Source: Trichoplax adhaerens (lineage: Eukaryota; Animalia; Placozoa). From it: 64,000 bases of DNA. Location: positions 958,267-1,022,266 of the forward strand of contig NW_002060964.1 of assembly GCF_000150275.1 (NCBI RefSeq), given 5' to 3'. Shown here piece by piece: positions 790 to 63,001 of this stretch (its first letter is position 1; each line of letters opens with the position of its first letter). The position numbers were made by a program, and so were the translations under genes. The notes beneath the pieces are model-generated. The model had not been told where the DNA came from. It saw only the letters and a program-made list of their open reading frames with translations, and ran no database searches.

Positions 790-3700
790 GAAAATAACGA
801 TCCGCATAATTACGCCATCTTAAGTAGCTGCCATGGATTACAAGGTATATTTTCATTTCAAGGGGAAATTTTTCGAATACAACCTTCAAATCCACAAAGC
901 ACAAGTTTAAATAGTCTACATGTCGTCTCCAAATTAAATCACTTGAACCATTACCATCGAATTACTCGCTCTATATGCAATATAGAAGAGGCAGATACAT
1001 CATCTCTAGTAGGTAAAGAAATCAATTGGAAACCCGACTTATGGCGACAAAGACGTATCTTGAACGTTAATACCATGTACATAGAGCTGGTGATTGTTAA
1101 TGATTATCAACAGGTTCAAAAATTCAAAGGCAATTTAACTGCTTTGGAAGAAAATATCTTTCAGGTTTACTTCTTACCGTCATTGCATTTATCAAAACAA
1201 ATAGCTTCTGTTATAGCAGTAATTTTATATCCATTTTATTGCCTAAACAACATGTCCGTCTCCTTTACTAGATCGTCAATCACCTTGATAGTATCTATAA
1301 ATCCGTCAATATACGCATTGGATTAACCGGTATTGTTAGTTGGAATATTAAAAATCCAATTACTGTCACTAATGAAGCTCGTAGGACCTTGGATAACTTT
1401 GCCACTTACAAGATCAACACCTTATCCAAATTATTTAATCTCGACAATGCACAACTGTTAACGGGATTATCATTAAATCAACATTCAGGTAACCATTCAT
1501 TATAAATAGGCTGCATCATGCCGTACTTGCTCTGTCATAGTCTATATTAATCAATGTTTTTCTAGTATTTTAATATCCTCAAAGTAGAATGCTAATAGAA
1601 TAAAGTAGCTTTCTTCACTACTTCGTTTACTTTGATACCATAATCTTAATTACTCTTAAATCAGTTCCGATTAAAAATAAATGTATCGTTGATAGTAGAA
1701 TACAGTACAACTATTGTAAAAGTAGCTATTTGTAGCTGTTGGTTTACTATGGCACAGTAATTCTACTTGAATCGATTGTGATTAAAATAGTTAACGTCCT
1801 TGAAAACAGAATATGCATAATGCAGTAGGCATCTTAAATCATGTAAATTTGTTCTGATAGTGCTCTTGAGTGGGAGTGATTAAAATAGTTTACCGGTATA
1901 ATGATTAAGAAAGAGCTAATATATAAGGCCGCCTTGATTACTGCGGCTTAATATATGTCGAGCACTGATATCGACAGGCCCTCTGTCTACCTTTATGTCA
2001 TAACGGCTATGAACTATTTTCTTATAATGAGTTGACACCAATAAATTCTTATTTTCAATCAATTTTAGGCTTAGCTTATATTTCGACGATTTGTTCGCCT
2101 CAATCAGTTGGCGTAGTCCAGTCTTATGACGATAATTTTGACGCAACGGTGACGGTTATTGCTCATGAACTTGGCCATAACTTAGGCATGAGACATGATA
2201 ATAATGATGTATGCCATTGCCAGTTTAAACCTGATCATGCATATCGCTGCATCATGTCGAGTGCATTAACAGAACCTCCACCCCAAACATTTTCCTCCTG
2301 TAGTCTTGATCAACTAAATATAACTATTCAACAAGGGAAGGTAGACTGTTTATTCAACAAACCGATACAGGTAATAACTCCGCCACGATGCGGTAATGGC
2401 CTACAAGAAAATGGGGAAGAATGTGATTGTGGCTCTTTGCAAGAATGCGCTAATTCTTGTTGTAATGCAACAACTTGTAAATTATATGATGGGGTTCAAT
2501 GCCAATCTGGGCCATGCTGCAATCAATGCCATTTTAAAGCTTTTGGTGAATTATGTCGTCAATCTATCAACCAATGTGACTTGCCAGAATATTGTAATGG
2601 CCAATCTGCAGCCTGTCCAGCTGATGTTGTAAAGCAATCTACTACACCTTGTGACAACAGTTCCGGGTATTGTTATCGTGGTAGTTGCTTAACAATTAAT
2701 CGCCAATGCAAGACATTATGGGGATCAACTAGCTATCCAGCTCTACCTATATGCTGGAATACATTAAATATTAGAGGTGATAATTACGGATTTTGCAAGC
2801 AAAATGGTAATGATTACAAGCCATGTAATCCAATTGATGTCTATTGCGGTGCTTTACAATGCAATTCGTCAGCTGATAATCCTGTTATAGATAGATCCCA
2901 TAAAACAGCGAAAATTTATTTTCCAAAAGTAATCAGAATTTGCAATTTGATATTTGCATTTAAGTAATTGTGCAGCAGCTTTAAGATTACTTTTTTTGCA
3001 GTTTTACTTTAATAATAGAAATGCAACAAATAGGCTAATGTAAATTTTAAATTGAAGCAGCCAAACACTGATATTATCTCATTTATTTTATAGAATGGCC
3101 AAAATATAGAATGCAAAAGTGTGACGATAAATGATGCAAACAGTATAAATATGTTAAATCATGTAGCTAACGGGACCAAATGCGGACATGATAAAATCTG
3201 CATTAATCATCAATGCCTTGATATTAATAAGTTAACGGATATAATTCAGTGTTTACCAAGCAATTGCTCTGGACATGGGGTAAGTTTAACTAGCAATCTT
3301 TCATGCGTTGATATTATTATTAATGAAATGTTGAGATCTTAATTATGATTTCTTGATTTAGGTCTGTAATAGCAAAGGTCACTGCCATTGTGATGCAGGC
3401 TATCGGCCACCGAATTGTCTTCAACCTGGTCACGGAGGAAGTATTGATAGCCATGGTCACGCAGTAATTCTTAATATCACAGCAAATATTTCAGTTAATG
3501 TTACTAGTGGTTTATGGGAAAGCACCATAAAAACAACTAAAACTTCTGGATCGCGATCTTTTGATACTTCAACAACATTGAGTGAATTATCCTCAGAACT
3601 AGAAATTTCTGCTTCGTTTACAAAAGGAGCTCCATCAAGTAATAATGAAGTATTGATGCTACTTGTAACGACAACAGCGGCAAAACTATTTCAGCCTGGT

Positions 3701-21108: not shown

Positions 21109-22763
21109 CCTGGCATATCACCGTTGAACTATGACTAGAACGGAAAAATTTCAATTCTGTGTAAATATATTTGCGGTAGTTTGTACTCATTTCATTCTAA
21201 AAAATACTTATTGTAGTACATGACATTGTAATGTTTTTTATGGCCAATATCTTAACGCTGGGAATTCTAATATAATGCATGGATTTTATGTTATCGTCCA
21301 TATCTAATTATAAGCAAGAATAAATTGATATTTTGCAATTTTATGCTTCCAGCACCGTTCAATAAAATGAGGTGTTACTACAGTTGTCAAGTAGTTTTCT
21401 CTGATCGTCATCATCATAAAATAATGATTACACCATTGAATCATGATGCAGCTAAGCCCATGACTTATCATCATCTACACTCGGCTATTTTACGGTAGAC
21501 AGTTCCAATAAGTATGATGATGATGAAATAATGTTTACGCTATTTTCTCAGGAGCAATGACAATTATTAATTGTATCATTAGAAGAGAAATTAAGGTTGG
21601 AAAAATCATGTTACATAAATGCCGATTGCAGTTGATTGCAATACAAACTAATGTTAGTCTGTCGATCTGTGATGAAATCCAGCTCAATTACTTGGAAATG
21701 AGGGACGCCAGAGGTTCGGTTAAATATGTTGATAAATTCTTCAAATTGGAGTTACAAATAGCCTACAATGCACCAGTCTTACCTTCTAAAGTGCATAAGA
21801 TCCAAAGGATCAAGTTCAACTTCAGCTCGGAAATGGAGCAATGCTATGATTATAATATAGCGGTCTGCAGAACTACCTCACCGCAAAAGAGTACTCTACC
21901 GTTGGGTAGTGATATTGTCGTAGCTGCTAGCTTCGATAATAGTTTATAATTTACAGAGAAAGCCAGTTGTGGACTCATCTTCTCCATGACTACTGTCTCC
22001 ATGGTATTACTTCCTTCTACAGTATCTAGTCGGCAGAAACACATACGAAGGCCTAAGATCCTTGATTAGATCCCCAAATCATCTCGCATTAGCTGATGTG
22101 GATAATTCTATAAAGTTGTAAACTGTCCTTTAGAAATCTAAACTTGTCCTATTAAGAGATCAAGACTTTAACTCGTGGTCAATAGTGTGAAAACCTGAGA
22201 TCCATCTGGAACGTATGCGTCCTTAATGACCTCATTCAGAACAGAAATGGTGGAAAGGTAACCCTTGTATTTTAGCTTACATGCCAAGAATAGATTAATC
22301 TATGATTTTTAAACGTTTTTAAGGATAGGAAATGATCCACTAAAAGGTTTTTAACCTTTTCTAGTGAAATAGAAATGATAATAGATACTGTCATGTTTTC
22401 CAGCCCTTTTTAGTGGATGACAGTTCTGCAAGTTGGATTTCTAGCCATGAAAGACTGCTTAATTAAAGCATGAGCTATTTAGTTGGCGTATAACTAGCAT
22501 TGCTAGTGGACAATTGCTATACTGTACAAGTAGAAATGGAATACTGTACGCGTAGTTCAACCCTTGTTGGCCACGTGTTGGCCAATCGTTTCAACATGGA
22601 GCCATTTTTAGAAGAGGGTTAACGATATCCAGACGTACTAATTTAGTCCTCTGTGAATGGATTGCGTAGCGAAAGATACACGTAGATTAACACTAGCGTT
22701 TAATTGAAACATTTGAAAGCATTCTTTGATATATTTTATACTTACAGATCGGAGAAAACTGTT

Positions 22764-25121
22764 ATGGAGTCGTTCGATGGACTGGATGATTTATTTTCCA
22801 AATTGTCATTGGAATCTTTAAATGCTCCATTCAAATCATCAACACAAGATACCAAGAGCAATAAACTAAGACAAGATGGAAGCTTACTGGATAAAAAGAA
22901 TCCATTGGATATTAATAATCAGCCAATTAATCAAGATAGCGTCAATCAAAGTAAAAAGCAAAACTTGACAAATCTAGAAGTCATGTCGCCATTACAGCAA
23001 AAATGTTTTATTAAAACGGTTCCTTTTGAATCATTCCAAGTTGGAAGCAACATCAAAATTGAGGTCTTAGCTGTTATAAATCCCAATTACTTTTTTGTTC
23101 GCGATAGAGCACAAATGAATGAAGAAATGAAGACCAGTTATCAACAGTTACAAGCTAAAATGAAGAAACTCTATCAACAATTTTTGCCAAGGAAACAGAC
23201 ATGGTATTGCGGCGATATAGGTGTTGCACGTTTAAAAATAGATGGCGAATGGCATCGAGTAATGCTGGATACTATAGGAAAAACACACGCTGAAGTACAT
23301 TGCATTGATACTGGCTACTATCAACAAGTATCATTAAAAGATTGCTTTCCTTTATATTCGTGTCTTGCAAGCCGAAAGGCAATGGCTGTAGCTTGTAGCT
23401 TAGACAACGTGGATTACTCACCTTGCTTGCAATACTGGCCGATGGATGTTACTCAATTATTCTCTTCTTGGTTAAAAAGTCATCATGTTACCATGAAAGT
23501 ATCGTCAAGGCAAGATGATATCCATTTTGTTCAGATTGAATTTTACCAGTTAACGGAATGTTTTCATGCTAATACAGAATTGCTTAAATGCAAATGGGCT
23601 ATTACAAGGTGCAACCATTTGCAAAGTCAATCAGCTCGTCATCGGATACATCACTATCAACGTATTCTGCGAGAGTCGCAAGCCTGTTCGGTTCCATTAA
23701 TTTCTATTCCTCGTAAGAAATGGATCGATGTTTATGCTACAGCTATTGTCAGTCCAAGTTTATTTTGGCTCAAATTCTCGCATAATACTAAAGCTAGCGA
23801 TGATCATTCGTATAAACCGCATGCTAACACTATTGCTAAGAAAAATTGTGAAGTTGGCTGCGTTTTTTTAATTCGTAACAAGAATGGAACTTATTTTCGT
23901 GGACAACTTAAGTGCTTATTAATGTATGATTATGCTTTAGTACAAGATATCGATTCTGCAATTGTTTCAAAGGTTATGTTAAAAGGAAATTTAATCAAAT
24001 TATCCAATGCGCAAAAACGATTACCAGCTACTGCTGTCCAATGTTACCTCGATCTTGTCAACGGTGATCGTGAGATGAATTGGAGTAGTTCCATTCTACA
24101 TCAATTTACGTCAGCTGTAAATGCAGGCAAATTAAAGGCTTTATTCCATCCTCAAGCTACCGATATACATGGTATAAAATTGCATCAAATGAAGCAAACG
24201 GATTGCATCGATATTAATCGGATAATAGAACAAGCACTTATTGAGAAAGATGCTATGGATATAAGTAACAACGATGAAAATTTACCCATAATGAATGATA
24301 ATATACATAGTTTGGATAGTTCAGTTTGCAATTTAAAGCAACATACACCCTACCTAGATACATTAACCTTAAACAGTTCGAAATCGATCGATTTAACATC
24401 AGCTAAGAAGATGGGACAGCATGGAAATCGGCCGAGTGATCCTTCAAAAAAACGACTGGAATGTTTCTCTAGCTTAAAATCATCTCCAATAGCCAAACCG
24501 AAGGACAAATTATCACGCGATGTCAATAATACAAGTAGTCAGCGGAATAAATGTATGAAGGATACATTGGAAAATGGCAAACAACACTCTAAAATTTACA
24601 GCAATTATCCAAATTCACCAAATTATAATCACTCACAACGACCATCTGATCTCATGAATTCATATACAAGATTGCCTTCGATGGATTATTCTATGCCACA
24701 CAGTAGATTTACAAATTGCCACCAATTAAATTGGAACGAATATTATTACCAACATCATAACGGTTATCATTATCGACCATTGGAATATAATTATTCCAGA
24801 CTAGCATGTTTAGAGAGACCAGCTCGACAGCCGTATGCAGGATATAGGACTCCATTGGATGAAAGATGTAGCAATTATCCCTTGCGACAAGGTATGGTAA
24901 GAGAATCGAATAATTCTGATTTAAGATGGATAACTCCTCCATACCCGGAAAGTGGTTATCCAATGGCAAATAATCCACAATTCCGATACCATCGATTTCA
25001 ACACCCGAGTCCTCACTGGATGATGACCAGGCCTCATCAGCCTGCCTGGCCTAGACCTCAGTTAGGAATGCATCCCCATTTTCCTCCTAACCCGCCAAGA
25101 GCAAGAGATTTCAGTAGGTAA
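22764..25121 (+). CDS. Tudor-domain-containing protein (two extended Tudor domains plus low-complexity C-terminus)
   Basis: Single long ORF with first ATG at 22764. Tudor 1: VLAVINPNYFFV..DGEWHRV..VHCIDTG..KAMAVACSLDNV..WP. Tudor 2: ATAIVSPSLFWL..GTYFRG..LPATAVQCYL..WS. The tail is P/Y/H/R-rich. Confidence 0.85.
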   Translation: MESFDGLDDLFSKLSLESLNAPFKSSTQDTKSNKLRQDGSLLDKKNPLDINNQPINQDSVNQSKKQNLTNLEVMSPLQQKCFIKTVPFESFQVGSNIKIEVLAVINPNYFFVRDRAQMNEEMKTSYQQLQAKMKKLYQQFLPRKQTWYCGDIGVARLKIDGEWHRVMLDTIGKTHAEVHCIDTGYYQQVSLKDCFPLYSCLASRKAMAVACSLDNVDYSPCLQYWPMDVTQLFSSWLKSHHVTMKVSSRQDDIHFVQIEFYQLTECFHANTELLKCKWAITRCNHLQSQSARHRIHHYQRILRESQACSVPLISIPRKKWIDVYATAIVSPSLFWLKFSHNTKASDDHSYKPHANTIAKKNCEVGCVFLIRNKNGTYFRGQLKCLLMYDYALVQDIDSAIVSKVMLKGNLIKLSNAQKRLPATAVQCYLDLVNGDREMNWSSSILHQFTSAVNAGKLKALFHPQATDIHGIKLHQMKQTDCIDINRIIEQALIEKDAMDISNNDENLPIMNDNIHSLDSSVCNLKQHTPYLDTLTLNSSKSIDLTSAKKMGQHGNRPSDPSKKRLECFSSLKSSPIAKPKDKLSRDVNNTSSQRNKCMKDTLENGKQHSKIYSNYPNSPNYNHSQRPSDLMNSYTRLPSMDYSMPHSRFTNCHQLNWNEYYYQHHNGYHYRPLEYNYSRLACLERPARQPYAGYRTPLDERCSNYPLRQGMVRESNNSDLRWITPPYPESGYPMANNPQFRYHRFQHPSPHWMMTRPHQPAWPRPQLGMHPHFPPNPPRARDFSR

Positions 25122-38870: not shown

Positions 38871-40286
38871 TTAAATATCCTGATCAAGTAACGGCTTGCC
38901 TTCTGCATTCTGCGCTACACGGATCTGTCTTGTATCGTTAGCAAGCAATGACTTCACTTTCATGTAATAAAAATGAACACTATACAACGTAGTAGGCAAG
39001 GCTATTAGTGATGCAAAAATACTCATTATACAAGCAGCAAGGAAAGTAGACGAAGCATCATTGGATGATATCTTCAGAAAAAGTTGATAGCCACTCATGA
39101 TAAGATTGGCTACTATAAAGAAACTTGTCAGTACACATAAAATAGTATAAGTACTATAAGTCATGACACACTTTTTACGAAGGATGTTAGCAGCAGTTCT
39201 ACCACTTGCCATTAAGAGGCAGCCAGTTAAGCCAGTAAATACAACTATAGGATCACCATATAAAATAGCAATAGCCAAGACTGCGGCTACAAAGCATATC
39301 ATTGCGCTTATAAATTGGATGACAGCAAAACAAAATTCTCGACTCTGGATCGCATATTCATATCCCATCCATTCTTCGCCATTCCTAACTGAATCAAATT
39401 TGTGAAGTCCCAGCCTACTTCCCACTAAAACTTCAACATAAACTGCGAAAAAAAAGCCAACTATGGAAGCTGCCAGTAAAATAAAGAGGAAAACGTAGAT
39501 CAGAGAACGATTGGAAATAAATGATGTGGCCCCCTGCGCCATATAAACGATATCACAAATCATCACTAGCCAACACGCCATCATAGCAATTCGACTAAAA
39601 GCAACAAACCAATTACCAGTATTGGCTGAATTCAGTTTAGCTGTAAATTCTCCCATGATACCCGATGTAAATATCATGGAACCAGCAGCAATAGCAACAA
39701 CAGGATAAACGATGGTGACATTGAATAATCCAACCATACCAATAATGGTGAGCACTATCCCAGCGAAAATTTGCCAAACCGCTAACGTTTTGTATTGAAC
39801 ATCACAACAACCATATTCATCGGCCCAGCTATATCGAACCCAAATACCTCTTCTGGTATGATTGTGATCATTACCATCATCATCCGTGGTTGTTAGGTAA
39901 TACTTATTGACAGATATGAAAGCAACGATGAGTATTGCACTAGTGCTGATACCGTTGATGATAAAGAGGATCGTAGGGCCAGAAAGATGAAAGTAGCCAT
40001 TAGTAATAAATATACTACAGTAGATGATAAAATTGCTCAAGCCTAAATGCAAGCACCAAAATGATAAGGCAAAGATAGCGGTAGTAACAGTATCATGAGG
40101 AGCATTCTTGCGATAAAATAGACAGAAAGCCAAAGACAATACCGCTATTGCAGGTAGTATGGGACCAGTAAAAGCAAGTGTGCGAATAGTTTGATCAGCT
40201 GCTATGGGAAGAACCACAAAAGAGACAACACTTAACAGAAAATTTCCCATTCCAAATAAGAGCAATACCATAATAATCCATTCCAT
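38871..40286 (-). CDS. Intronless ~12-TM membrane protein, apparently 3 tandem CD20/MS4A-like 4-TM modules (paralog A)
   Basis: 471-aa ORF with 12 hydrophobic segments in three groups of four. Module 2 reads KTLAVWQIFAGIVLTIIG..YPVVAIAAGSMIFTSGIMG. It is clearly paralogous to 42508-43908. Confidence 0.85.
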   Translation of the reverse strand: MEWIIMVLLLFGMGNFLLSVVSFVVLPIAADQTIRTLAFTGPILPAIAVLSLAFCLFYRKNAPHDTVTTAIFALSFWCLHLGLSNFIIYCSIFITNGYFHLSGPTILFIINGISTSAILIVAFISVNKYYLTTTDDDGNDHNHTRRGIWVRYSWADEYGCCDVQYKTLAVWQIFAGIVLTIIGMVGLFNVTIVYPVVAIAAGSMIFTSGIMGEFTAKLNSANTGNWFVAFSRIAMMACWLVMICDIVYMAQGATSFISNRSLIYVFLFILLAASIVGFFFAVYVEVLVGSRLGLHKFDSVRNGEEWMGYEYAIQSREFCFAVIQFISAMICFVAAVLAIAILYGDPIVVFTGLTGCLLMASGRTAANILRKKCVMTYSTYTILCVLTSFFIVANLIMSGYQLFLKISSNDASSTFLAACIMSIFASLIALPTTLYSVHFYYMKVKSLLANDTRQIRVAQNAEGKPLLDQDI

Positions 40287-41299
40287 CTTGTCCAGACGCT
40301 TTTACTTTAGTGAACAAGTGCCTTGATAGATGGACTGACCGTCAATACTAATGTAAGAATATTCTCTCTATAATGATCAATTTCTTGGATTTGTTAAAAT
40401 GATAATCAACCTTGACTTGCTACTTTATAGAATGGAGATTGGTGGACTGTCATCAACGAAGAGATGAGCAATTGGAAATGCCATACATAGCACTCAAGCT
40501 GAGTGATCAGTCATTGAAGCCCTTAATAGTCTTGTAGTGGCTGATCCACTTCTCCTAATAATGCACAGAATAGTAACGGCTTGTTCTACTATCGCTGGAA
40601 TGGATTTGTTCAATGGATCTTCAACGTTTCGTTGCCCTTTTCTTGATCGAGGTGGCCAGTGTTATGCTGCAAGTTGATTCTATGAGTAAACATCTGATAG
40701 TCACGCGCCTCCTACCTTACTGTAGTTTTCGTAGTCATGTCCAAGACGGTGGCGTTCTGTTATAGCGTAGAAAGCGTTAAAATAAATGAGAAATGTGGAT
40801 GGCTAGATAGTCACAGTCAATAAGAATCATAATTTACAGTACTCTACTGTATGATGTCCAATTCTCCACTCAAAACCAGCTAAAATGGCAGTTTTTAGTC
40901 TAAATTGATGTTGAAAATTTTGCTCTCTATGCTTGCACAGAACTGGAGCAAGTTAAAAGCCCTTGACAGTCACGAGTGCATCAAACACTATAGTATACAC
41001 AGTATGACAATCAATTAAGTAAATATAATCTGCTGTCGCTATGGTAATTCTACCGACTGGGTGCAGCCAAAGGCAACTTGCAATCAAGTTACAAGAGCTT
41101 AAAAGCACCGTAAAAGAAGCTAACAATTATTCTGCAGTCCTAATCCAACTTCTACTCGTTCTATTTCGTGTACTTGTTTGACTAAGAAGGATAATTCTAT
41201 TTATTGTGCTGTACTGCAATAATTTAGTAGTCTAGATAGCCATGGTAAGAGAGATTTTCTTATACCTATTGCTAGGCAGTTAAGCTCGAAACCATGGAG

Positions 41300-41331
41300 T
41301 TCTAGATTACTTCCCGGGAAGTAATCTAGAA
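41300..41331. repeat. Perfect 32-bp palindrome centred on TTCCCGGGAA
   Basis: TTCTAGATTACTTCCC|GGGAAGTAATCTAGAA. Confidence 0.95.
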
Positions 41332-42507
41332 GTCTATGCCGAAATTCTACCGTACTTTACTTACGAAGGTGCAGAGCTTTAAGGCTAAGAATGCATTCAA
41401 CGCTACAGCAGGTGCAGTACGATAATCAGAAGAAAGAAGCTATCCAAGCAAGGAACTACTGGTTTAATAATTAATGCATCTTCTATTAGGATATAGTTAT
41501 GATTGCAAAGTGTTATGTCGAAAAACATACAGCATACCAGTCATTGCTATAAATGACTGACTAATTTTTCAAAAGCGATTAGCAAAATACTGCCGACATG
41601 AATTTGGTTTTTAATCAAGATCCAGGATAGAAACTAGCTATATTATCGGTACTCTATATAGAAAACAAGTGGTTAACCATTTGCGTGATGATAACTCTAA
41701 AATTGCGCTCTCTGTAAACGTCTGAAATAGATCCTGTAGAGCTATGGGGAAGAAAATCAATTTTTCAACTGTATGTTGATTGTATTTCATATCGAGGCAT
41801 AGCAGGCGGCATTAACTGTGGGTTTTGTGCATTCAACACGCGTCTAAAATAGATCCTGTACAATGCCATCAGCATTGAACAGGAAGGTAGTCCATTTCTT
41901 GTCCTATACCGTTGTCATCACAAATTAAATTAGTAGAGTTGCGATGCATGCAAGATACAGGTAAAAGTGAAAGACTTTCCTTTTCTCGCAATACGCGATC
42001 GACTCCAACTCTCTAGTATTTCAAGATTAATGTTGATTCTGTATTAATGAATTATTCATCTTACAAAACACTGCAAATAACTAGTACTACAATAAGTGTA
42101 CGTACATAAGTACAGGCAGAAAAGATTTAACATACAGTAATTGTAAAGTACAAGGATAATATCGTGCAGTTGGGTGGTTGAAGTAATAAAATACTGCCTT
42201 GCAGAAGGTGAGTAACAATGATTTAAAAGCTGACGTTGCATCTACAGCATAGCATTGATATTAATAAATATATACAAGATGGAAGTAATTTATTATTGAG
42301 TGTCAGCAGAATTGATTTAACAAACAATCCTAAGTCAACAAATGCATCAGCAAAAATGCAAGGTGTGGAATGGTATACCACAAGTTTATCTTTTATACAG
42401 TATAGACAGTTATGTTGGAGGACCATCTGCCATATTGGTAAAAATACAATCGTTGTCCCCTTTCTATCGTCATTTTCATCGAAAATAGAGAATTAGCTTA
42501 CTCCTCA

Positions 42508-43908
42508 CTACAGTAAATCCTTCCTAACTTCAGATGCAGCATCTGCTTCTTCCGTTAAGACATCTTTAGTGACTTCGTTACCGTAGATATAGACGCTGTA
42601 CAATGTAGCAAAAAGACAGAATAATGACACCCCGATGTTGACTAGATCAATAATCATAAAGGCAGGCGATTTATGTGGCGATTTATCGATCAATATCCAC
42701 AAGAGCAACTGATGGATGGATAGAACAAAGTTGGCTGCTAGACAAAAGCTACTCATGCTGCACAGAACTAAATAACAACTGTGAATTGAAACATTTTTTC
42801 TTTTCAATATATTTCCTGCAGTTCTACCGGCAGCAATCAAAAAATAGGATGTTAAGCTAGTAAAAAGTACAAAAGGTGCAGCATGCAAGAGTATTGCCGT
42901 TAGAAAGGTAATCGCGATAAAGATACAACCACAGAGCGTTAATATGAAGCACAAGACAAATTGTTTGGTTTTCAATGCTTGGCTATAACCCTGCCAAGGT
43001 TCACCATTTTTCACCGGATCATACTTATGCATCCCTAATCGACTTCCAATAATTACTTCTACAGAAACCGATAAGAAAAATCCAGCTATACTTGATATAG
43101 CTGTAAATGCAAATATCACCAACGAGGTTGCTGTATTCCACCGAGAATATTCCTTTGCATGAACAATAAATATAACGTTACACATAACCGATACCCAACA
43201 GCCACATCCTCCAGCACGACTGAAAGTGAGAAACCATATACCAGCATCGGGTAATTGTAACTTAGATGTGATGATGCCTAGTATGCCCGCAGTCAATAGA
43301 CAAGTACCAGCTAGGATAAATAACATGGGGAAAACACTATTTTCGCCAAACAAACCAACGATACTACTGACTAATAGCGTAATACTGGCAATGACTTGGC
43401 CCTGGCCTACACTACCATAATATTGATTTGAACCTGTACAACAAAATTCATCTGTCCAGTAATATCGTACCCAGCCACTGCATCTTTCATAATCATTGCA
43501 CGCAGACAACGATTTATAATACCTATTGACGCTTAAACAAGACAATCCACTAATACCTAAAGCGGTAGCAATATTGACAATGAAGAGGATGCATTGCGGA
43601 GCAGTATTAAAATAATTGTTGCTAATAAAGATATAACAGTATGTTATAATATTAACGGTCGATAGGGCTATACTCCATACCGACAACGCCATGATAGAAG
43701 CTAAAAGAGTAGCATTCGGCTTTTGATTATAAGTTAGTAAAGCTGTTATTACGGAAAAGATGGAGATAGCTGGTAGTACAGGCGTAGTAAATGTCATAGC
43801 ACTGATGGTCCCATTACTTGGATGAACACCAATAACAAAGAAGGATAAAGAGCCAGAAAGAAAGCTAATAGCCCCTAAAATTGCTAAGATAACAAATACT
43901 TTCTCCAT
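42508..43908 (-). CDS. Intronless ~12-TM membrane protein (paralog B)
   Basis: ATG 43908 (MEKVFV) aligns with MEWIIM of paralog A. Shared motifs: FTxPxLPAI, SVNxYY, WVRYxWxDExxC, WFxxFSR, EVxxGSRLGxHKxDxVxNGExWxGY and GRTAxNIL. Confidence 0.85.
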   Translation of the reverse strand: MEKVFVILAILGAISFLSGSLSFFVIGVHPSNGTISAMTFTTPVLPAISIFSVITALLTYNQKPNATLLASIMALSVWSIALSTVNIITYCYIFISNNYFNTAPQCILFIVNIATALGISGLSCLSVNRYYKSLSACNDYERCSGWVRYYWTDEFCCTGSNQYYGSVGQGQVIASITLLVSSIVGLFGENSVFPMLFILAGTCLLTAGILGIITSKLQLPDAGIWFLTFSRAGGCGCWVSVMCNVIFIVHAKEYSRWNTATSLVIFAFTAISSIAGFFLSVSVEVIIGSRLGMHKYDPVKNGEPWQGYSQALKTKQFVLCFILTLCGCIFIAITFLTAILLHAAPFVLFTSLTSYFLIAAGRTAGNILKRKNVSIHSCYLVLCSMSSFCLAANFVLSIHQLLLWILIDKSPHKSPAFMIIDLVNIGVSLFCLFATLYSVYIYGNEVTKDVLTEEADAASEVRKDLL

Positions 43909-51542: not shown

Positions 51543-52502
51543 ATGCTTAATAATAATACTAATACATACACGTCAGAAAGCTCTGCTTTTTTAGTCGTCC
51601 AACTTTGCGTTACGACATTGGTATCGGTTAGTAATATCGCTTTAGTGGTAATCGTGGCGTTCTCTAAAAATTTACACGATTTATCTTATAACTTTATTAT
51701 TAATGTATCTATATCCGATATTATTTCATCTATCATACAATATACATATATCGGTACATCAATCTCAACCGTTTCAATGCCTAGACCTGTAGGTGTTGTT
51801 GTATGTCCAATAGCATATGGACTTACGGTTACATCGATCAATACCTCTATTACAAGTTTAACTATGATAAGTATCTATCGATTTAAAATCGTTACTTGTC
51901 CGTTAACATTTCGAGATACAACTATTTTTAAACATTGTACTAAGTTTATTATACTGTCTTGGCTTATAAGCGTCATATTCGCTACCCCTGCTTTCCTAAT
52001 AGGAACTTATAATTCAGCCACGAACAACTGTGACTTTGGCTTCCCTTATGGTAACATCTTCAACGTTGTCTATTTTTCGATTACCTTGCTATTCGTGTAC
52101 TTGATTCCAGGAATAATAATGTTAAGGAATTATAACCGTATCGTTATCAGTTTATCTTCTCAAATATCTGATAACACTGCTATATCTCATGACCGCGAAG
52201 CTTCTATTAATCGTACACGAAGCGTTATTCGAGTTTTTATTGTCGCAACACTGGCACAAACATTACTGACATTGCCCTATATTATGACTATGTTGACTTA
52301 TTCAATACTCAATCAAAGCCAATTTCAGCTACTCTTTAACAATCCCCAATTTTTTGTAGCCAACTTTATATCGTTTGCGAGTAATACCGTATCCTACTTG
52401 ATAAATCCATTTATATTCTTGATTTTCGATAAAAATGTAAAAACGTCAATGTATGACTTATGTCTTCGAATTCGTGATAGACGTAGTAATACGAAATCAT
52501 GA
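51543..52502 (+). CDS. Class A (rhodopsin-like) orphan GPCR, intronless, paralog 1
   Basis: 319 aa with 7 hydrophobic segments: SN (TM1), NVSISD (TM2), C3.25 and ISIYRF (TM3), W (TM4), ECL2 Cys, YLIPG..Y (TM5), LPY (TM6) and NPFIF (TM7). Confidence 0.93.
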   Translation: MLNNNTNTYTSESSAFLVVQLCVTTLVSVSNIALVVIVAFSKNLHDLSYNFIINVSISDIISSIIQYTYIGTSISTVSMPRPVGVVVCPIAYGLTVTSINTSITSLTMISIYRFKIVTCPLTFRDTTIFKHCTKFIILSWLISVIFATPAFLIGTYNSATNNCDFGFPYGNIFNVVYFSITLLFVYLIPGIIMLRNYNRIVISLSSQISDNTAISHDREASINRTRSVIRVFIVATLAQTLLTLPYIMTMLTYSILNQSQFQLLFNNPQFFVANFISFASNTVSYLINPFIFLIFDKNVKTSMYDLCLRIRDRRSNTKS

Positions 52503-55032: not shown

Positions 55033-55992
55033 ATGTATAATAATACTACTCACACACAATCGCAAGAAATTTCTATTTATTTAATTATTCAGTTTTGCCT
55101 TGCTACATTGACATTGATTAGCAATATCGCTCTAGTGGTGATTGTGGCGTTGTCTAAAAATTTACACGATCAATCGTATAACTTTATTATTAATGTATCT
55201 ATATCTGATATTATTTCATCGATCATACAGTATACATATGCCATTATAGCAATCCCAACTGTTTCAATATCTAGACCTGTTGTTGCAGTGGTATGTCGAT
55301 TAGCATATGGAGTTTTGGTTACATCGACTAATACCTCTATTACAAGTTTAACTATGATAAGTATCTATCGATTAAAAATCGTTACTTGTCCGTTAATATT
55401 TCGAAAAACAATCATTGTTAAGCATTGTAATAAGTTTATTATACTATCGTGGCTTGTAAGCGCCGTGTTCGCTATCCCCGCTTTCCTAATAGGAACATAT
55501 AATCCAGCGACAAAAAACTGCGACGTTGGCTTCCCTTATGGTAAAATCTTCAACGTTGTCTATTTTTCGATTACCTTGCCATTCATTTACTTGATTCCGG
55601 GAATAATAATGTTAAAGAATTATAGGCGTATCGCAACCAGTCTATCCTCTCAAATATCCGATAACATTGCTGTAGCTCATGACTGCGAAGCCTCCATTAA
55701 TCGTACAAGGAGCGTTATTCGAATTTTTATCATTGCGACACTAGCACAAATATTAATGACATTGCCCTATATTATATCTTCCTTGACTTATGCGATACTC
55801 AATCAGAGCCAATATCAGGTAGTCGCTGATGATAATCTCCAATTTTTTGTAATGTGGTCATCGTTTGTGATTAATAACGCATCCTACTTGGTAAATCCGT
55901 TTATGTTCTTGGTTTTCGATAAAAATGTTAAAGTTACAGCGCATGATTTATGTCTTCAAATTCATAATAGTTGTAATAATATGAAATCATGA
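55033..55992 (+). CDS. Class A orphan GPCR, intronless, paralog 2
   Basis: 319 aa, colinear without gaps with paralog 1; ISIYRL and NPFMF motifs. Confidence 0.93.
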   Translation: MYNNTTHTQSQEISIYLIIQFCLATLTLISNIALVVIVALSKNLHDQSYNFIINVSISDIISSIIQYTYAIIAIPTVSISRPVVAVVCRLAYGVLVTSTNTSITSLTMISIYRLKIVTCPLIFRKTIIVKHCNKFIILSWLVSAVFAIPAFLIGTYNPATKNCDVGFPYGKIFNVVYFSITLPFIYLIPGIIMLKNYRRIATSLSSQISDNIAVAHDCEASINRTRSVIRIFIIATLAQILMTLPYIISSLTYAILNQSQYQVVADDNLQFFVMWSSFVINNASYLVNPFMFLVFDKNVKVTAHDLCLQIHNSCNNMKS

Positions 55993-62041: not shown

Positions 62042-63001
62042 ATGTTTAATAATACTACTCTTACACAATCGCAAGAAAATTTTGCTCTTATAGTTATCCA
62101 GTTTAGCCTTATTACGTTGACATTGGTTAGCAATATCGCTCTAGTAGGGATCGTGGCGTTCTCTAAAAATTTACATGATTTATCTTATAACTTTATTATT
62201 AATGTATTTATATCTGATATTCTCTCATCAATCATACAGTGTACATATGCCATTACAGCAATCTCAACCGCTTCAATATCTAGGCCTGTTAGTGTACTTA
62301 TATGTCGATTAGCATATGGACTTATGGTTACATCGGCCAACACCTCTATTGCAAGTTTAACTATGATAAGTATCTATCGATTAAAAATCGTCAGTTGTCC
62401 TTTAACATTTCGCAACACGATCATTTTTAAACATTGTACTAAGTTTATTATACTGTCTTGGCTTATGGGCGTCGTATTCGCTATCCCTGCTTTCCTAATA
62501 GGAGCTTATGATCCAGAAACGAAAGGCTGTGACATTGGCTTCCCTTATGATAAAGTCTTCAACATTGTCTATTTTTCGATTACTTTACTATTTGTCTACT
62601 TGATTCCAGGAATAATAATGTTAAGGAATTACAAACGTATCGCAATCTGTTTATCTTCTCAAATATCCGATAATACTGCTATAGCTCAAGACCGTAACGC
62701 TTCTATTAATCGCACAAGAACCGTTATTCGAGTCTTTATCATCGTGACAGTTGCACAAACATTACTGCCATTGCCCTATATTATATCTGTCTTAACTTAC
62801 TCAATACTCAATCAGAACCAATTTCAGTTACACGCTGATATTCCCCAACTTTCTGTAATCATCTGGCTATCGTTCGTTATCAATATAGCATCCTACCTAG
62901 TAAATCCATTTATGTTCTTAATTTTCGATAAAAATATTAGAATTGCAGCGCATGATCTATGTCTTCGAATTTATGATAGCTGTAGTTTTACGAAATCATG
63001 A
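62042..63001 (+). CDS. Class A orphan GPCR, intronless, paralog 3
   Basis: 319 aa, colinear with paralogs 1 and 2; ISIYRL and NPFMF motifs. Confidence 0.93.
   Translation: MFNNTTLTQSQENFALIVIQFSLITLTLVSNIALVGIVAFSKNLHDLSYNFIINVFISDILSSIIQCTYAITAISTASISRPVSVLICRLAYGLMVTSANTSIASLTMISIYRLKIVSCPLTFRNTIIFKHCTKFIILSWLMGVVFAIPAFLIGAYDPETKGCDIGFPYDKVFNIVYFSITLLFVYLIPGIIMLRNYKRIAICLSSQISDNTAIAQDRNASINRTRTVIRVFIIVTVAQTLLPLPYIISVLTYSILNQNQFQLHADIPQLSVIIWLSFVINIASYLVNPFMFLIFDKNIRIAAHDLCLRIYDSCSFTKS

What the first reader, a model, noticed from the sequence alone, without database searches (positions are those of the whole stretch)
38871..43908. Pair of 12-TM proteins that look like covalent trimers of CD20/MS4A tetraspan modules
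Seen: each protein has three blocks of four hydrophobic helices separated by conserved soluble linkers (WVRYxWxDExxC; GSRLGxHKxDxVxNGExWxGY). Blocks 2 and 3 share a (L/F)AVxQ start, a Pro before helix 2 and (S/A)G then basic residues after it, with conserved intramembrane Arg (FSR, GRT). Paralog A ends in an ExxxLL sorting signal (EGKPLL) and B ends in LL. Known: MS4A/TMEM176 proteins are single 4-TM units that oligomerise; some act as chemosensors or cation channels. Inference: an undescribed concatenated pseudo-trimeric channel/chemoreceptor family, sitting ~8 kb from a GPCR array. No MFS motif A was seen.
Basis: partly seen in the sequence, partly recalled or inferred. Interest (0 to 1): 0.8.

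Follow-up and report, generated by a model that had tools for sequence, protein, structure and literature searches.

The report
Placozoan triple-tetraspan 12-TM protein pair
Two neighbouring intronless Trichoplax genes encode a placozoan-only membrane protein made of three four-helix bundles in one chain, two of which are predicted to fold like CD20/MS4A-type tetraspans; common ancestry with that family, a pore and any function remain unproven.

Summary
Window 38871-40286(-) and 42508-43908(-) are two complete, intronless ORFs of 471 and 466 aa, 35% identical. The genome is Trichoplax (Placozoa).

The genes are real and under selection. dN/dS is 0.11-0.17 against orthologues from two other placozoan lineages, and the B-then-A tandem order is conserved. 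Charge bias puts both termini and both linkers in the cytosol. The outer loops are only 5-14 aa.

An exhaustive phmmer search of 1.84 billion representatives found only the two paralogue clusters. Pfam, PDB sequence profiles and block-versus-block hhalign all gave nothing significant.

At fold level the CD20 idea gains real support:
- Block 2 folded alone has FceRI-beta (MS4A2) and sarcospan as its top PDB matches by two aligners (Z 16.8-15.9; TM 0.80).
- Block 3 has MS4A2 as its top match (Z 13.3).
- Language-model neighbours are CD20 and MLC1 clusters, but the scores are weak.
- Block 1 is not shown to be CD20-like.

No MFS or other transporter fold fits. Three-fold pseudo-symmetry, a pore, and channel or chemoreceptor function remain untested. 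Tandem 2x and 6x MS4A proteins and the 4+4 protein MLC1 are already known. I read this as a new 3x variant of a known kind, of moderate interest.

The parts
38871..40286 (-). Gene A: intronless ORF, 471 aa, 12 TM helices (P0001)
   Evidence: Orthologue P0002 is 68% identical. dN/dS 0.11.
42508..43908 (-). Gene B: intronless ORF, 466 aa, paralogue of A, lying upstream of A on the same strand (P0005; nearly identical to TrispH2_009965)
   Evidence: Orthologue P0004 is 63% identical. dN/dS 0.17.
39882..40286 (-). A block 1 (residues 1-135, TM1-4)
   Evidence: Structural hits are generic 4-helix bundles such as LRRC8A, connexins and a de novo channel.
39807..39842 (-). A linker 1 motif WVRYSWADEYGC (residues 149-160), cytosolic
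39402..39815 (-). A block 2 (residues 158-295, TM5-8), with predicted CD20-type tetraspan fold
   Evidence: sarcospan Z 16.8 and 16.1; MS4A2 Z 15.9, TM 0.80.
39360..39422 (-). A linker 2 motif GSRLGLHKFDSVRNGEEWMGY (residues 289-309), cytosolic; the most conserved segment
38943..39371 (-). A block 3 (residues 306-448, TM9-12); its top PDB match is MS4A2
   Evidence: 8k7t_B Z 13.3, 8yt8_S Z 12.1, 8yvu_F Z 11.7.
38886..38903 (-). A C-terminal EGKPLL, an ExxxLL-type dileucine; K-x-L-L is invariant in the family
   Evidence: A sorting role is inference only.
43501..43908 (-). B block 1 (residues 1-136)
43438..43473 (-). B linker 1 motif WVRYYWTDEFCC (residues 146-157)
43027..43446 (-). B block 2 (residues 155-294)
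42985..43047 (-). B linker 2 motif GSRLGMHKYDPVKNGEPWQGY (residues 288-308)
42559..42996 (-). B block 3 (residues 305-450)
42511..42522 (-). B C-terminal KDLL (last four residues)

Best explanation
These are two functional, tandemly duplicated, intronless genes of a family found only in placozoans. Each encodes one polypeptide of three consecutive tetraspan four-helix bundles (4+4+4 = 12 TM).

Shown or well supported: both termini and both conserved inter-bundle linkers face the cytosol, and the outer loops are very short. At least bundles 2 and 3 are predicted to adopt the CD20/MS4A/sarcospan-type fold.

Inferred: the protein is a three-module, single-chain version of what MS4A-type tetraspans do by oligomerising and what MLC1 does with a 4+4 repeat. 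By analogy with the better-studied relatives (FceRI-beta, sarcospan, CD20, MLC1), the most likely role is a non-enzymatic membrane organiser or auxiliary subunit. Its conserved cytosolic linkers and K-x-L-L tail would then be the interaction and trafficking surfaces. Ion conduction is a minority possibility. The triplication is old enough that the blocks have lost all significant sequence similarity to one another and to CD20-family proteins.
For: Real and selected:
- Complete ORFs; paralogues at E 3e-94.
- Orthologues in two other placozoan lineages.
- dN/dS 0.11-0.17.
- B-then-A tandem order conserved on metagenome contig L008.
- One paralogue is an annotated Trichoplax sp. H2 protein.

Architecture:
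- 12 helices in three blocks of about 120 aa (AF2 pTM 0.71; Atlas model pTM 0.78).
- K+R count is 19-22 on the terminus side against 1-4 on the other side, in all four sequences.

CD20-type fold:
- Block 2 folded alone, VIA-align against 48,161 chains: ranks 1-3 are 8yt8_S and 9c3c_n (the only 4-TM component of the dystrophin-glycoprotein complex, i.e. sarcospan; PMC12750041) at Z 16.8 and 16.1, rmsd 2.2 A over 132-134 residues, then MS4A2 (8k7t_B) at Z 15.9. CD20 itself scores Z 11.6-11.8.
- Foldseek against 350,542 chains: the top five are four FceRI-beta entries and sarcospan, TMq up to 0.80.
- Block 3 within the whole model: top hit MS4A2, Z 13.3.
- The ESM feature search puts CD20/MS4A and MLC1 clusters first for both the whole protein and block 2.
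- A profile of Trichoplax's own CD20-like exons aligns to the first helix of each block in the same register, but weakly.

Precedent: tandem 2x and 6x MS4A proteins (PMC2826416); MLC1 4+4 repeat with no measured conductance (PMC9144339).
Against: - No sequence test links the protein to CD20. Pfam hmmscan of whole proteins and of blocks lists nothing for CD20 at E<=10. PDB profile searches of the three blocks return no CD20-family chain and nothing significant. Block profiles hit only themselves in the own genome.
- hhalign block against block gives E 0.2-0.45.
- The CD20-exon profile gives P 0.01-0.2, against 0.06-0.36 for reversed controls.
- Models are of modest confidence (pLDDT 61 and 64) and built from only 4 sequences.
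- Four-helix bundles are promiscuous. Tetraspanin uroplakin scores Z 15.8 for block 2. The Atlas shape search gave MARVEL, tetraspanin and flower families rather than CD20. Viral 4-TM proteins reach similar Foldseek E-values.
- ESM scores of 0.82-0.86 are in the range called 'lead only'.
- Block 1 has no CD20-family hit.
- The function is inferred purely by analogy.
Confidence: 0.55

Rival explanations
1. This is an orphan placozoan 12-TM family whose three bundles are generic up-down four-helix membrane bundles. It shares no ancestry with CD20/MS4A/MLC1, and the structural matches reflect convergence on a common packing.
For: - All sequence-level tests are negative.
- Tetraspanins, soluble copper-storage bundles and designed bundles also score Z 12-16.
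- The Atlas shape search does not return CD20.
- Zuccolo et al. warn that short TM similarities to MS4A occur in many unrelated proteins (PMC2826416).
Against: - CD20-family chains take the top ranks for block 2 with two independent aligners. They also show the highest sequence identity among the top hits, 13-17% against 5-10%.
- The same family tops block 3.
- An independent language-model search names the same families twice.
Confidence: 0.3
2. One reading: the three modules form a pseudo-three-fold single-chain cation channel, or a chemoreceptor, with a central or intra-bundle pore.
For: - Several invariant polar residues lie within helices: N85, N111, Q172, R232, N394.
- The best whole-length matches are heme-copper oxidase subunit I and NOR, which to my own knowledge are 12-TM proteins with three-fold pseudo-symmetry. 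Foldseek gives TMq 0.36-0.39. VIA gives Z 6.8-8.4 over 244-295 residues spanning nearly all helices.
- From my own knowledge, TMEM176B and some MS4As have been reported as channels or chemosensors.
Against: - The whole-length matches are below any meaningful threshold. Symmetry and a pore could not be measured.
- Outer loops are 5-14 aa and poorly conserved, while the conserved surfaces are cytosolic. That fits poorly with an extracellular chemosensor.
- To my knowledge, solved CD20, FceRI-beta and sarcospan structures show no pore. MLC1 showed no conductance (PMC9144339).
- Being 7.6 kb from GPCR genes is not functional evidence.
Confidence: 0.15
3. A divergent member of a known 12-TM transporter or enzyme fold: MFS, APC, otopetrin, or heme-copper oxidase subunit I.
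For: Twelve TM helices. There are weak Foldseek rows for ba3 oxidase, MFS, POT and Otop1.
Against: - TM scores are 0.16-0.23 for MFS, POT and Otop1, and 0.39 at most for oxidases.
- VIA gives Z 6.6 at rmsd 8.1 for MFS.
- There is no invariant histidine in any helix, so no heme or copper ligands.
- No Pfam transporter family matches.
- The organisation is 4+4+4, not 6+6.
Confidence: 0.03

Closest known systems
MS4A / CD20-like family (Pfam PF04103: CD20, FceRI-beta = MS4A2, TMEM176A/B, sarcospan)
   Same: Four TM helices per unit with N- and C-termini in the cytosol and short loops. The predicted bundle of block 2, and of block 3, superposes best on solved MS4A2 and sarcospan. There is a faint helix-1 (xxQ...G...G) and helix-2 (Pro start, then S/A-G) motif resemblance. 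Concatenated 2x and 6x MS4A proteins exist (PMC2826416).
   Different: No significant match to the family HMM. Three units sit in one chain, joined by family-specific conserved cytosolic linkers. There is no large second outer loop like that of CD20. The family is restricted to placozoans. Trichoplax has separate multi-exon CD20-like genes elsewhere in the genome.
MLC1 (Pfam PF27925, Membrane_MLC1)
   Same: Several tetraspan four-helix bundles in a single chain: MLC1 is 4+4 (PMC9144339), this family is 4+4+4. MLC1 clusters are among the nearest ESM feature neighbours for the whole protein and for block 2. One Atlas cluster carries both MLC1 and CD20 Pfam labels.
   Different: Three bundles, not two. 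No sequence match was found. The MLC1 HMM is absent from the local Pfam copy, so membership could not be tested. No MLC1 chain appeared among the listed PDB matches.
Heme-copper oxidase subunit I / NOR (12 TM; three-fold pseudo-symmetric arrangement of 4-helix arcs, from my own knowledge)
   Same: It is the best whole-length structural match, covering nearly all 12 helices.
   Different: TM <=0.39, Z <=8.4 and rmsd 5-6 A. There are no conserved histidine ligands. At most this is a similarity of overall arrangement, not homology.
Tetraspanins, MARVEL and claudin-type 4-TM proteins
   Same: Generic 4-TM bundle. Uroplakin Z 15.8, PRPH2 Z 13.8, MARVEL cluster TM 0.72.
   Different: No large cysteine-rich outer loop. 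Sequence identity is lower and rank is below the CD20-family hits in both PDB searches.

Membership tests
CD20-like family (PF04103) | Significant match to the family HMM | tested here: not met
   hmmscan of A, B, both orthologues and each block at E<=10 does not list CD20. A PF04103 scan of the whole genome at E<=1 hits three other loci and not these genes.
CD20-like family (PF04103) | Tetraspan unit: four TM helices with both ends cytosolic | tested here: met
   Each block has four helices. The positive-inside count is 19-22 against 1-4, which puts the block boundaries in the cytosol.
CD20-like family (PF04103) | Bundle superposes on solved family members better than on other 4-TM folds: blocks 2 and 3 | tested here: met
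   Block 2: sarcospan Z 16.8 and 16.1, MS4A2 Z 15.9 and 14.8, CD20 Z 11.6-11.8. The Foldseek top five are all MS4A2 or sarcospan, TMq 0.61-0.80. Block 3: MS4A2 ranks first at Z 13.3. Caveats: models have pLDDT 61-64; uroplakin scores Z 15.8; the Atlas shape search did not return CD20.
CD20-like family (PF04103) | Bundle superposes on solved family members: block 1 | tested here: inconclusive
   In the whole-model search, block 1 matched a de novo channel, LRRC8A and connexins. No CD20-family chain appeared in the top 50.
CD20-like family (PF04103) | Family sequence motifs in helices 1 and 2 (as seen in Trichoplax's own CD20-like exons) | tested here: inconclusive
   hhalign of the CD20-like exon profile lands in register on helix 1 of each block, with P 0.021, 0.011 and 0.21. 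Reversed controls give 0.36, 0.067 and 0.056. hmmsearch scores are about 0 bits.
MLC1 (PF27925) | Match to the family HMM | not testable with these tools
   PF27925 is not in the local Pfam library. The only evidence is ESM feature neighbours at 0.82-0.84.
MLC1 (PF27925) | Internal repeat of 4-TM bundles in one chain | tested here: inconclusive
   Three equal-sized 4-helix blocks are present, but sequence similarity between blocks is not significant.
Major facilitator superfamily or other 6+6 transporters | 6+6 helix fold; MFS motif A | tested here: not met
   Foldseek TM 0.16-0.19 for MFS; VIA Z 6.6 at rmsd 8.1; no Pfam hit.
Heme-copper oxidase subunit I | Conserved histidine ligands for heme and copper in the TM helices | tested here: not met
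   No invariant His lies in any TM core. The only invariant His is H295, in cytosolic linker 2.

The most novel reading that the evidence does not exclude
The family is an ancient, placozoan-retained covalent pseudo-trimer of CD20/MLC1-type tetraspan modules that works as a single-chain ion channel or channel regulator. The three fused bundles would fix in one polypeptide an oligomeric arrangement that relatives reach non-covalently. If so, the CD20/MS4A/MLC1 superfamily would predate bilaterians, and this protein would be a naturally 'locked' oligomer in which to settle whether these tetraspans conduct ions.
Probability: 0.15. Interest if true: 0.7.

Novelty: new variant of a known kind. Interest (0 to 1): 0.45.

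Why it matters
It is still disputed whether MS4A/CD20-type tetraspans and MLC1 are channels, chemosensors or only scaffolds, and how far back the superfamily goes. An early analysis concluded that invertebrates lack MS4A-like genes (PMC2826416).

If these proteins do belong to that superfamily, they would be a placozoan protein with three such modules in one chain. That would push the fold to an early-branching animal lineage and add a 3x form to the known 1x, 2x and 6x architectures. A fixed-stoichiometry protein of this kind could also be used for structural and electrophysiological tests.

If the similarity is only convergent, the pair is still a conserved, lineage-restricted 12-TM family of unknown function. 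It would then be worth looking up in placozoan cell atlases.

Tried and rejected
- Pfam hmmscan of whole proteins, orthologues and separate blocks at E<=10: only sub-threshold noise such as DUF412 and DUF3273.
- Word-indexed protein search with A and with B: only self and one orthologue each.
- Exhaustive phmmer over 1.84e9 representatives: only the two paralogue clusters.
- Block 2 profile against 5.8e9 proteins of 77-245 aa: nothing at E<=10.
- Block profiles against PDB sequences: nothing relevant.
- Block profiles against the own genome: each hits only its own block in A and B, never another block or the CD20-like loci.
- hhalign block against block: E 0.2-0.45.
- HMM and hhalign of Trichoplax CD20-like exons against the blocks: in register, but not significant against reversed controls.
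- Whole-model Foldseek and VIA: no transporter fold; oxidase matches are weak.
- Atlas shape search of block 2: generic 4-TM families.
- BFVD viral search: generic viral 4-TM proteins.
- PF27925 search of the own genome: the model is not in the library.
- Literature search for the H2 locus tag, and for Trichoplax plus MS4A: nothing useful.
- Earlier scan notes near this place concern other features and did not bear on this finding.
- Not attempted: complex prediction, since no binding claim is made; block-on-block superposition, symmetry axis and pore analysis, since no tool gives model coordinates.
- The genes are intronless, so no spliced model was needed.

Full report
**What is there.** The window is AT-rich, gene-sparse animal DNA. 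It lies at G000:C1393:958267-1022266 of a 105.6-Mb assembly in 1414 contigs. One of the two proteins is nearly identical to 'hypothetical protein TrispH2_009965 [Trichoplax sp. H2]', so the genome is a Trichoplax (Placozoa).

On the minus strand there are two complete ORFs: A at 38871-40286 (471 aa) and B at 42508-43908 (466 aa from the ATG). B lies 2.2 kb upstream of A. They are full-length paralogues, 35% identical at E 3e-94, and they are the only two copies in the genome.

**Are they real genes?** Yes.
- Each has an orthologue elsewhere: P0002 (68% to A, two Logan assemblies) and P0004 (63% to B, two ENA metagenome assemblies).
- On metagenome contig L008 the B orthologue is followed about 700 bp downstream by the start of an A orthologue (62% to A, 72% to P0002). 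The B-then-A tandem pair therefore predates the split of at least three placozoan lineages, and the ORFs are uninterrupted in genomic DNA.
- dN/dS is 0.11-0.17. dS is saturated, so this is approximate.

**Architecture.** Hydropathy and AlphaFold2 on the 4-sequence alignment (pLDDT 61, pTM 0.71; the ESM Atlas's own model has pTM 0.78) both give 12 helices.
- They fall into three blocks of about 120 aa, at residues 5-126, 166-284 and 317-436 of A. All three have the same pattern of short loops.
- Lys+Arg counts are 19-22 on the side of the termini against 1-4 on the other side, in all four sequences. So the N-terminus, C-terminus and both linkers are cytosolic, and the outer loops are only 5-14 residues.
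- Linker 2 is the most conserved segment, with 53% invariant columns.
- An invariant Pro opens the second helix of every block: P42, P195 and P346.
- K-x-L-L near or at the C-terminus is invariant. In the A lineage it reads ExKxLL.

**Sequence relatives.** None were found outside the family.
- Exhaustive phmmer of A against 1.84 billion representatives found only the A and B clusters.
- Word-indexed searches with A, with B and with the block 2 profile added nothing.
- Pfam gave no family for whole proteins or for blocks at E<=10.
- PDB sequence profiles gave nothing.
- Block profiles searched against the own genome hit only their own block in A and B.
- hhalign between blocks gave E 0.2-0.45.

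By sequence, therefore, neither the internal triplication nor a link to CD20 can be demonstrated.

**Fold-level evidence.** Whole-model searches exclude known 12-TM transporter folds.
- MFS, POT and Otop1 give TM 0.16-0.23. MFS gives Z 6.6 at rmsd 8.1.
- The best whole-length matches are heme-copper oxidase subunit I and NOR: TMq 0.36-0.39, and Z 6.8-8.4 over 244-295 residues. These are 12-TM proteins that, to my knowledge, have three-fold pseudo-symmetry. The scores are below any safe threshold, and no helix carries an invariant His.

The domain-level results are more informative.
- In the exhaustive VIA-align search with the whole model, block 3 (310-445) had mouse FceRI-beta (MS4A2, 8k7t_B) as the top hit of 48,161 chains: Z 13.3, rmsd 3.2, 136 residues. 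Next came 8yt8_S at Z 12.1 and human FceRI-beta at Z 11.7.
- Block 2 folded alone (pLDDT 64) gave 8yt8_S at Z 16.8 and 9c3c_n at Z 16.1 (rmsd 2.2 A, 132-134 residues, 14-17% identity), MS4A2 at Z 15.9 and 14.8, and CD20 at Z 11.6-11.8.
- The DGC chains must be sarcospan, because it is the only four-pass component of that complex (PMC12750041). That sarcospan carries the Pfam CD20 domain is my own knowledge.
- Foldseek, an independent method, ranked four FceRI-beta entries and sarcospan as the top five of 350,542 chains for block 2: TMq 0.61-0.80, E 0.02-0.08.
- The ESM feature search named a CD20 cluster (0.86) and MLC1 clusters (0.84) for the whole protein. For block 2 alone it named an MS4A cluster and an MLC1 cluster (both 0.82).

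**Caveats on the fold evidence.**
- Four-helix bundles match promiscuously. Uroplakin scores Z 15.8, and copper-storage and designed bundles score Z 12-13.
- The Atlas shape search for block 2 returned MARVEL, tetraspanin, flower and bacterial 4-TM families, not CD20.
- Viral 4-TM proteins reach similar Foldseek E-values.
- ESM scores below 0.9 are stated by the tool to be leads only.
- The models rest on four sequences.
- Block 1 matched only generic bundles and could not be folded alone.
- Trichoplax has ordinary multi-exon CD20-like genes elsewhere. A profile of their first exons aligns to the first helix of each block in the same register, but with P 0.01-0.2 against 0.06-0.36 for reversed controls.

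**Interpretation.** I judge it more likely than not (0.55) that this is a three-module, single-chain derivative of the CD20/MS4A/MLC1-type tetraspan fold. The main rival (0.3) is that the bundles are generic and the resemblance is convergent.

Precedents reduce the novelty of concatenation. Zuccolo et al. described MS4A proteins with 2 and 6 tandem units (PMC2826416). MLC1 is modelled as a 4+4 repeat, forms trimers and showed no conductance (PMC9144339, PMC8633789). The first of these papers also warns that short TM similarities to MS4A are found in unrelated proteins, and that warning applies to the motif-level resemblance here.

**Mechanism.** This is inference.
- The conserved surfaces are cytosolic: the two linkers, the basic loop after helix 10 and the K-x-L-L tail. 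The outer loops are tiny and variable. This argues against an extracellular chemosensor.
- It fits a membrane organiser or auxiliary subunit that binds cytosolic or lateral partners and is sorted by a dileucine-type signal, like FceRI-beta, sarcospan and MLC1.
- Invariant polar residues inside helices (N85, N111, Q172, R232, N394) leave room for an ion pathway. I give a channel reading about 0.15.
- The GPCR array 7.6 kb away is only a neighbour.

**Verdict.** I class it as a new variant of a known kind, of moderate interest. No spliced model was needed.

Noticed in passing
window 51543-52502, 55033-55992, 62042-63001 (+): Three intronless 319-aa ORFs in tandem, each matching Pfam 7tm_1 (rhodopsin-type GPCR, E 1e-20 to 1e-25).
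   Followed up: partly
window 2032-2967 (+): An ORF with Reprolysin, Disintegrin and ADAM_CR domains. It is probably a large exon of an ADAM-type metalloprotease gene.
   Followed up: no
window 22704-25121 (+): An 805-aa ORF with two Tudor-domain matches.
   Followed up: no
G000:C1409:5090438-5090566 and 5094747-5094878 (L005, L007); G000:C1408:3618838-3618963 (L006): Trichoplax carries multi-exon CD20-like genes, two of them 4.3 kb apart. Their first exons match Pfam CD20 positions 1-41 at E 9e-5 to 3e-3, below the gathering score because only one exon is read. This bears on the older claim that invertebrates lack MS4A-like genes (PMC2826416).
   Followed up: partly
L008 (ENA ERZ27263980 k141_609758) and L009 (ENA ERZ23499115): Metagenome assemblies contain genomic DNA of a placozoan other than the window's species, with the same B-then-A gene pair but a much shorter intergenic spacer: about 0.7 kb from the B stop to the A start codon, against 2.2 kb here.
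   Followed up: partly
ESM Atlas neighbours of P0001: A 162-aa cluster of hypothetical proteins from Nucleocytoviricota appears among the nearest feature neighbours both for the whole protein (0.83) and for block 2 (0.82). The BFVD fold search showed only generic viral 4-TM proteins.
   Followed up: partly
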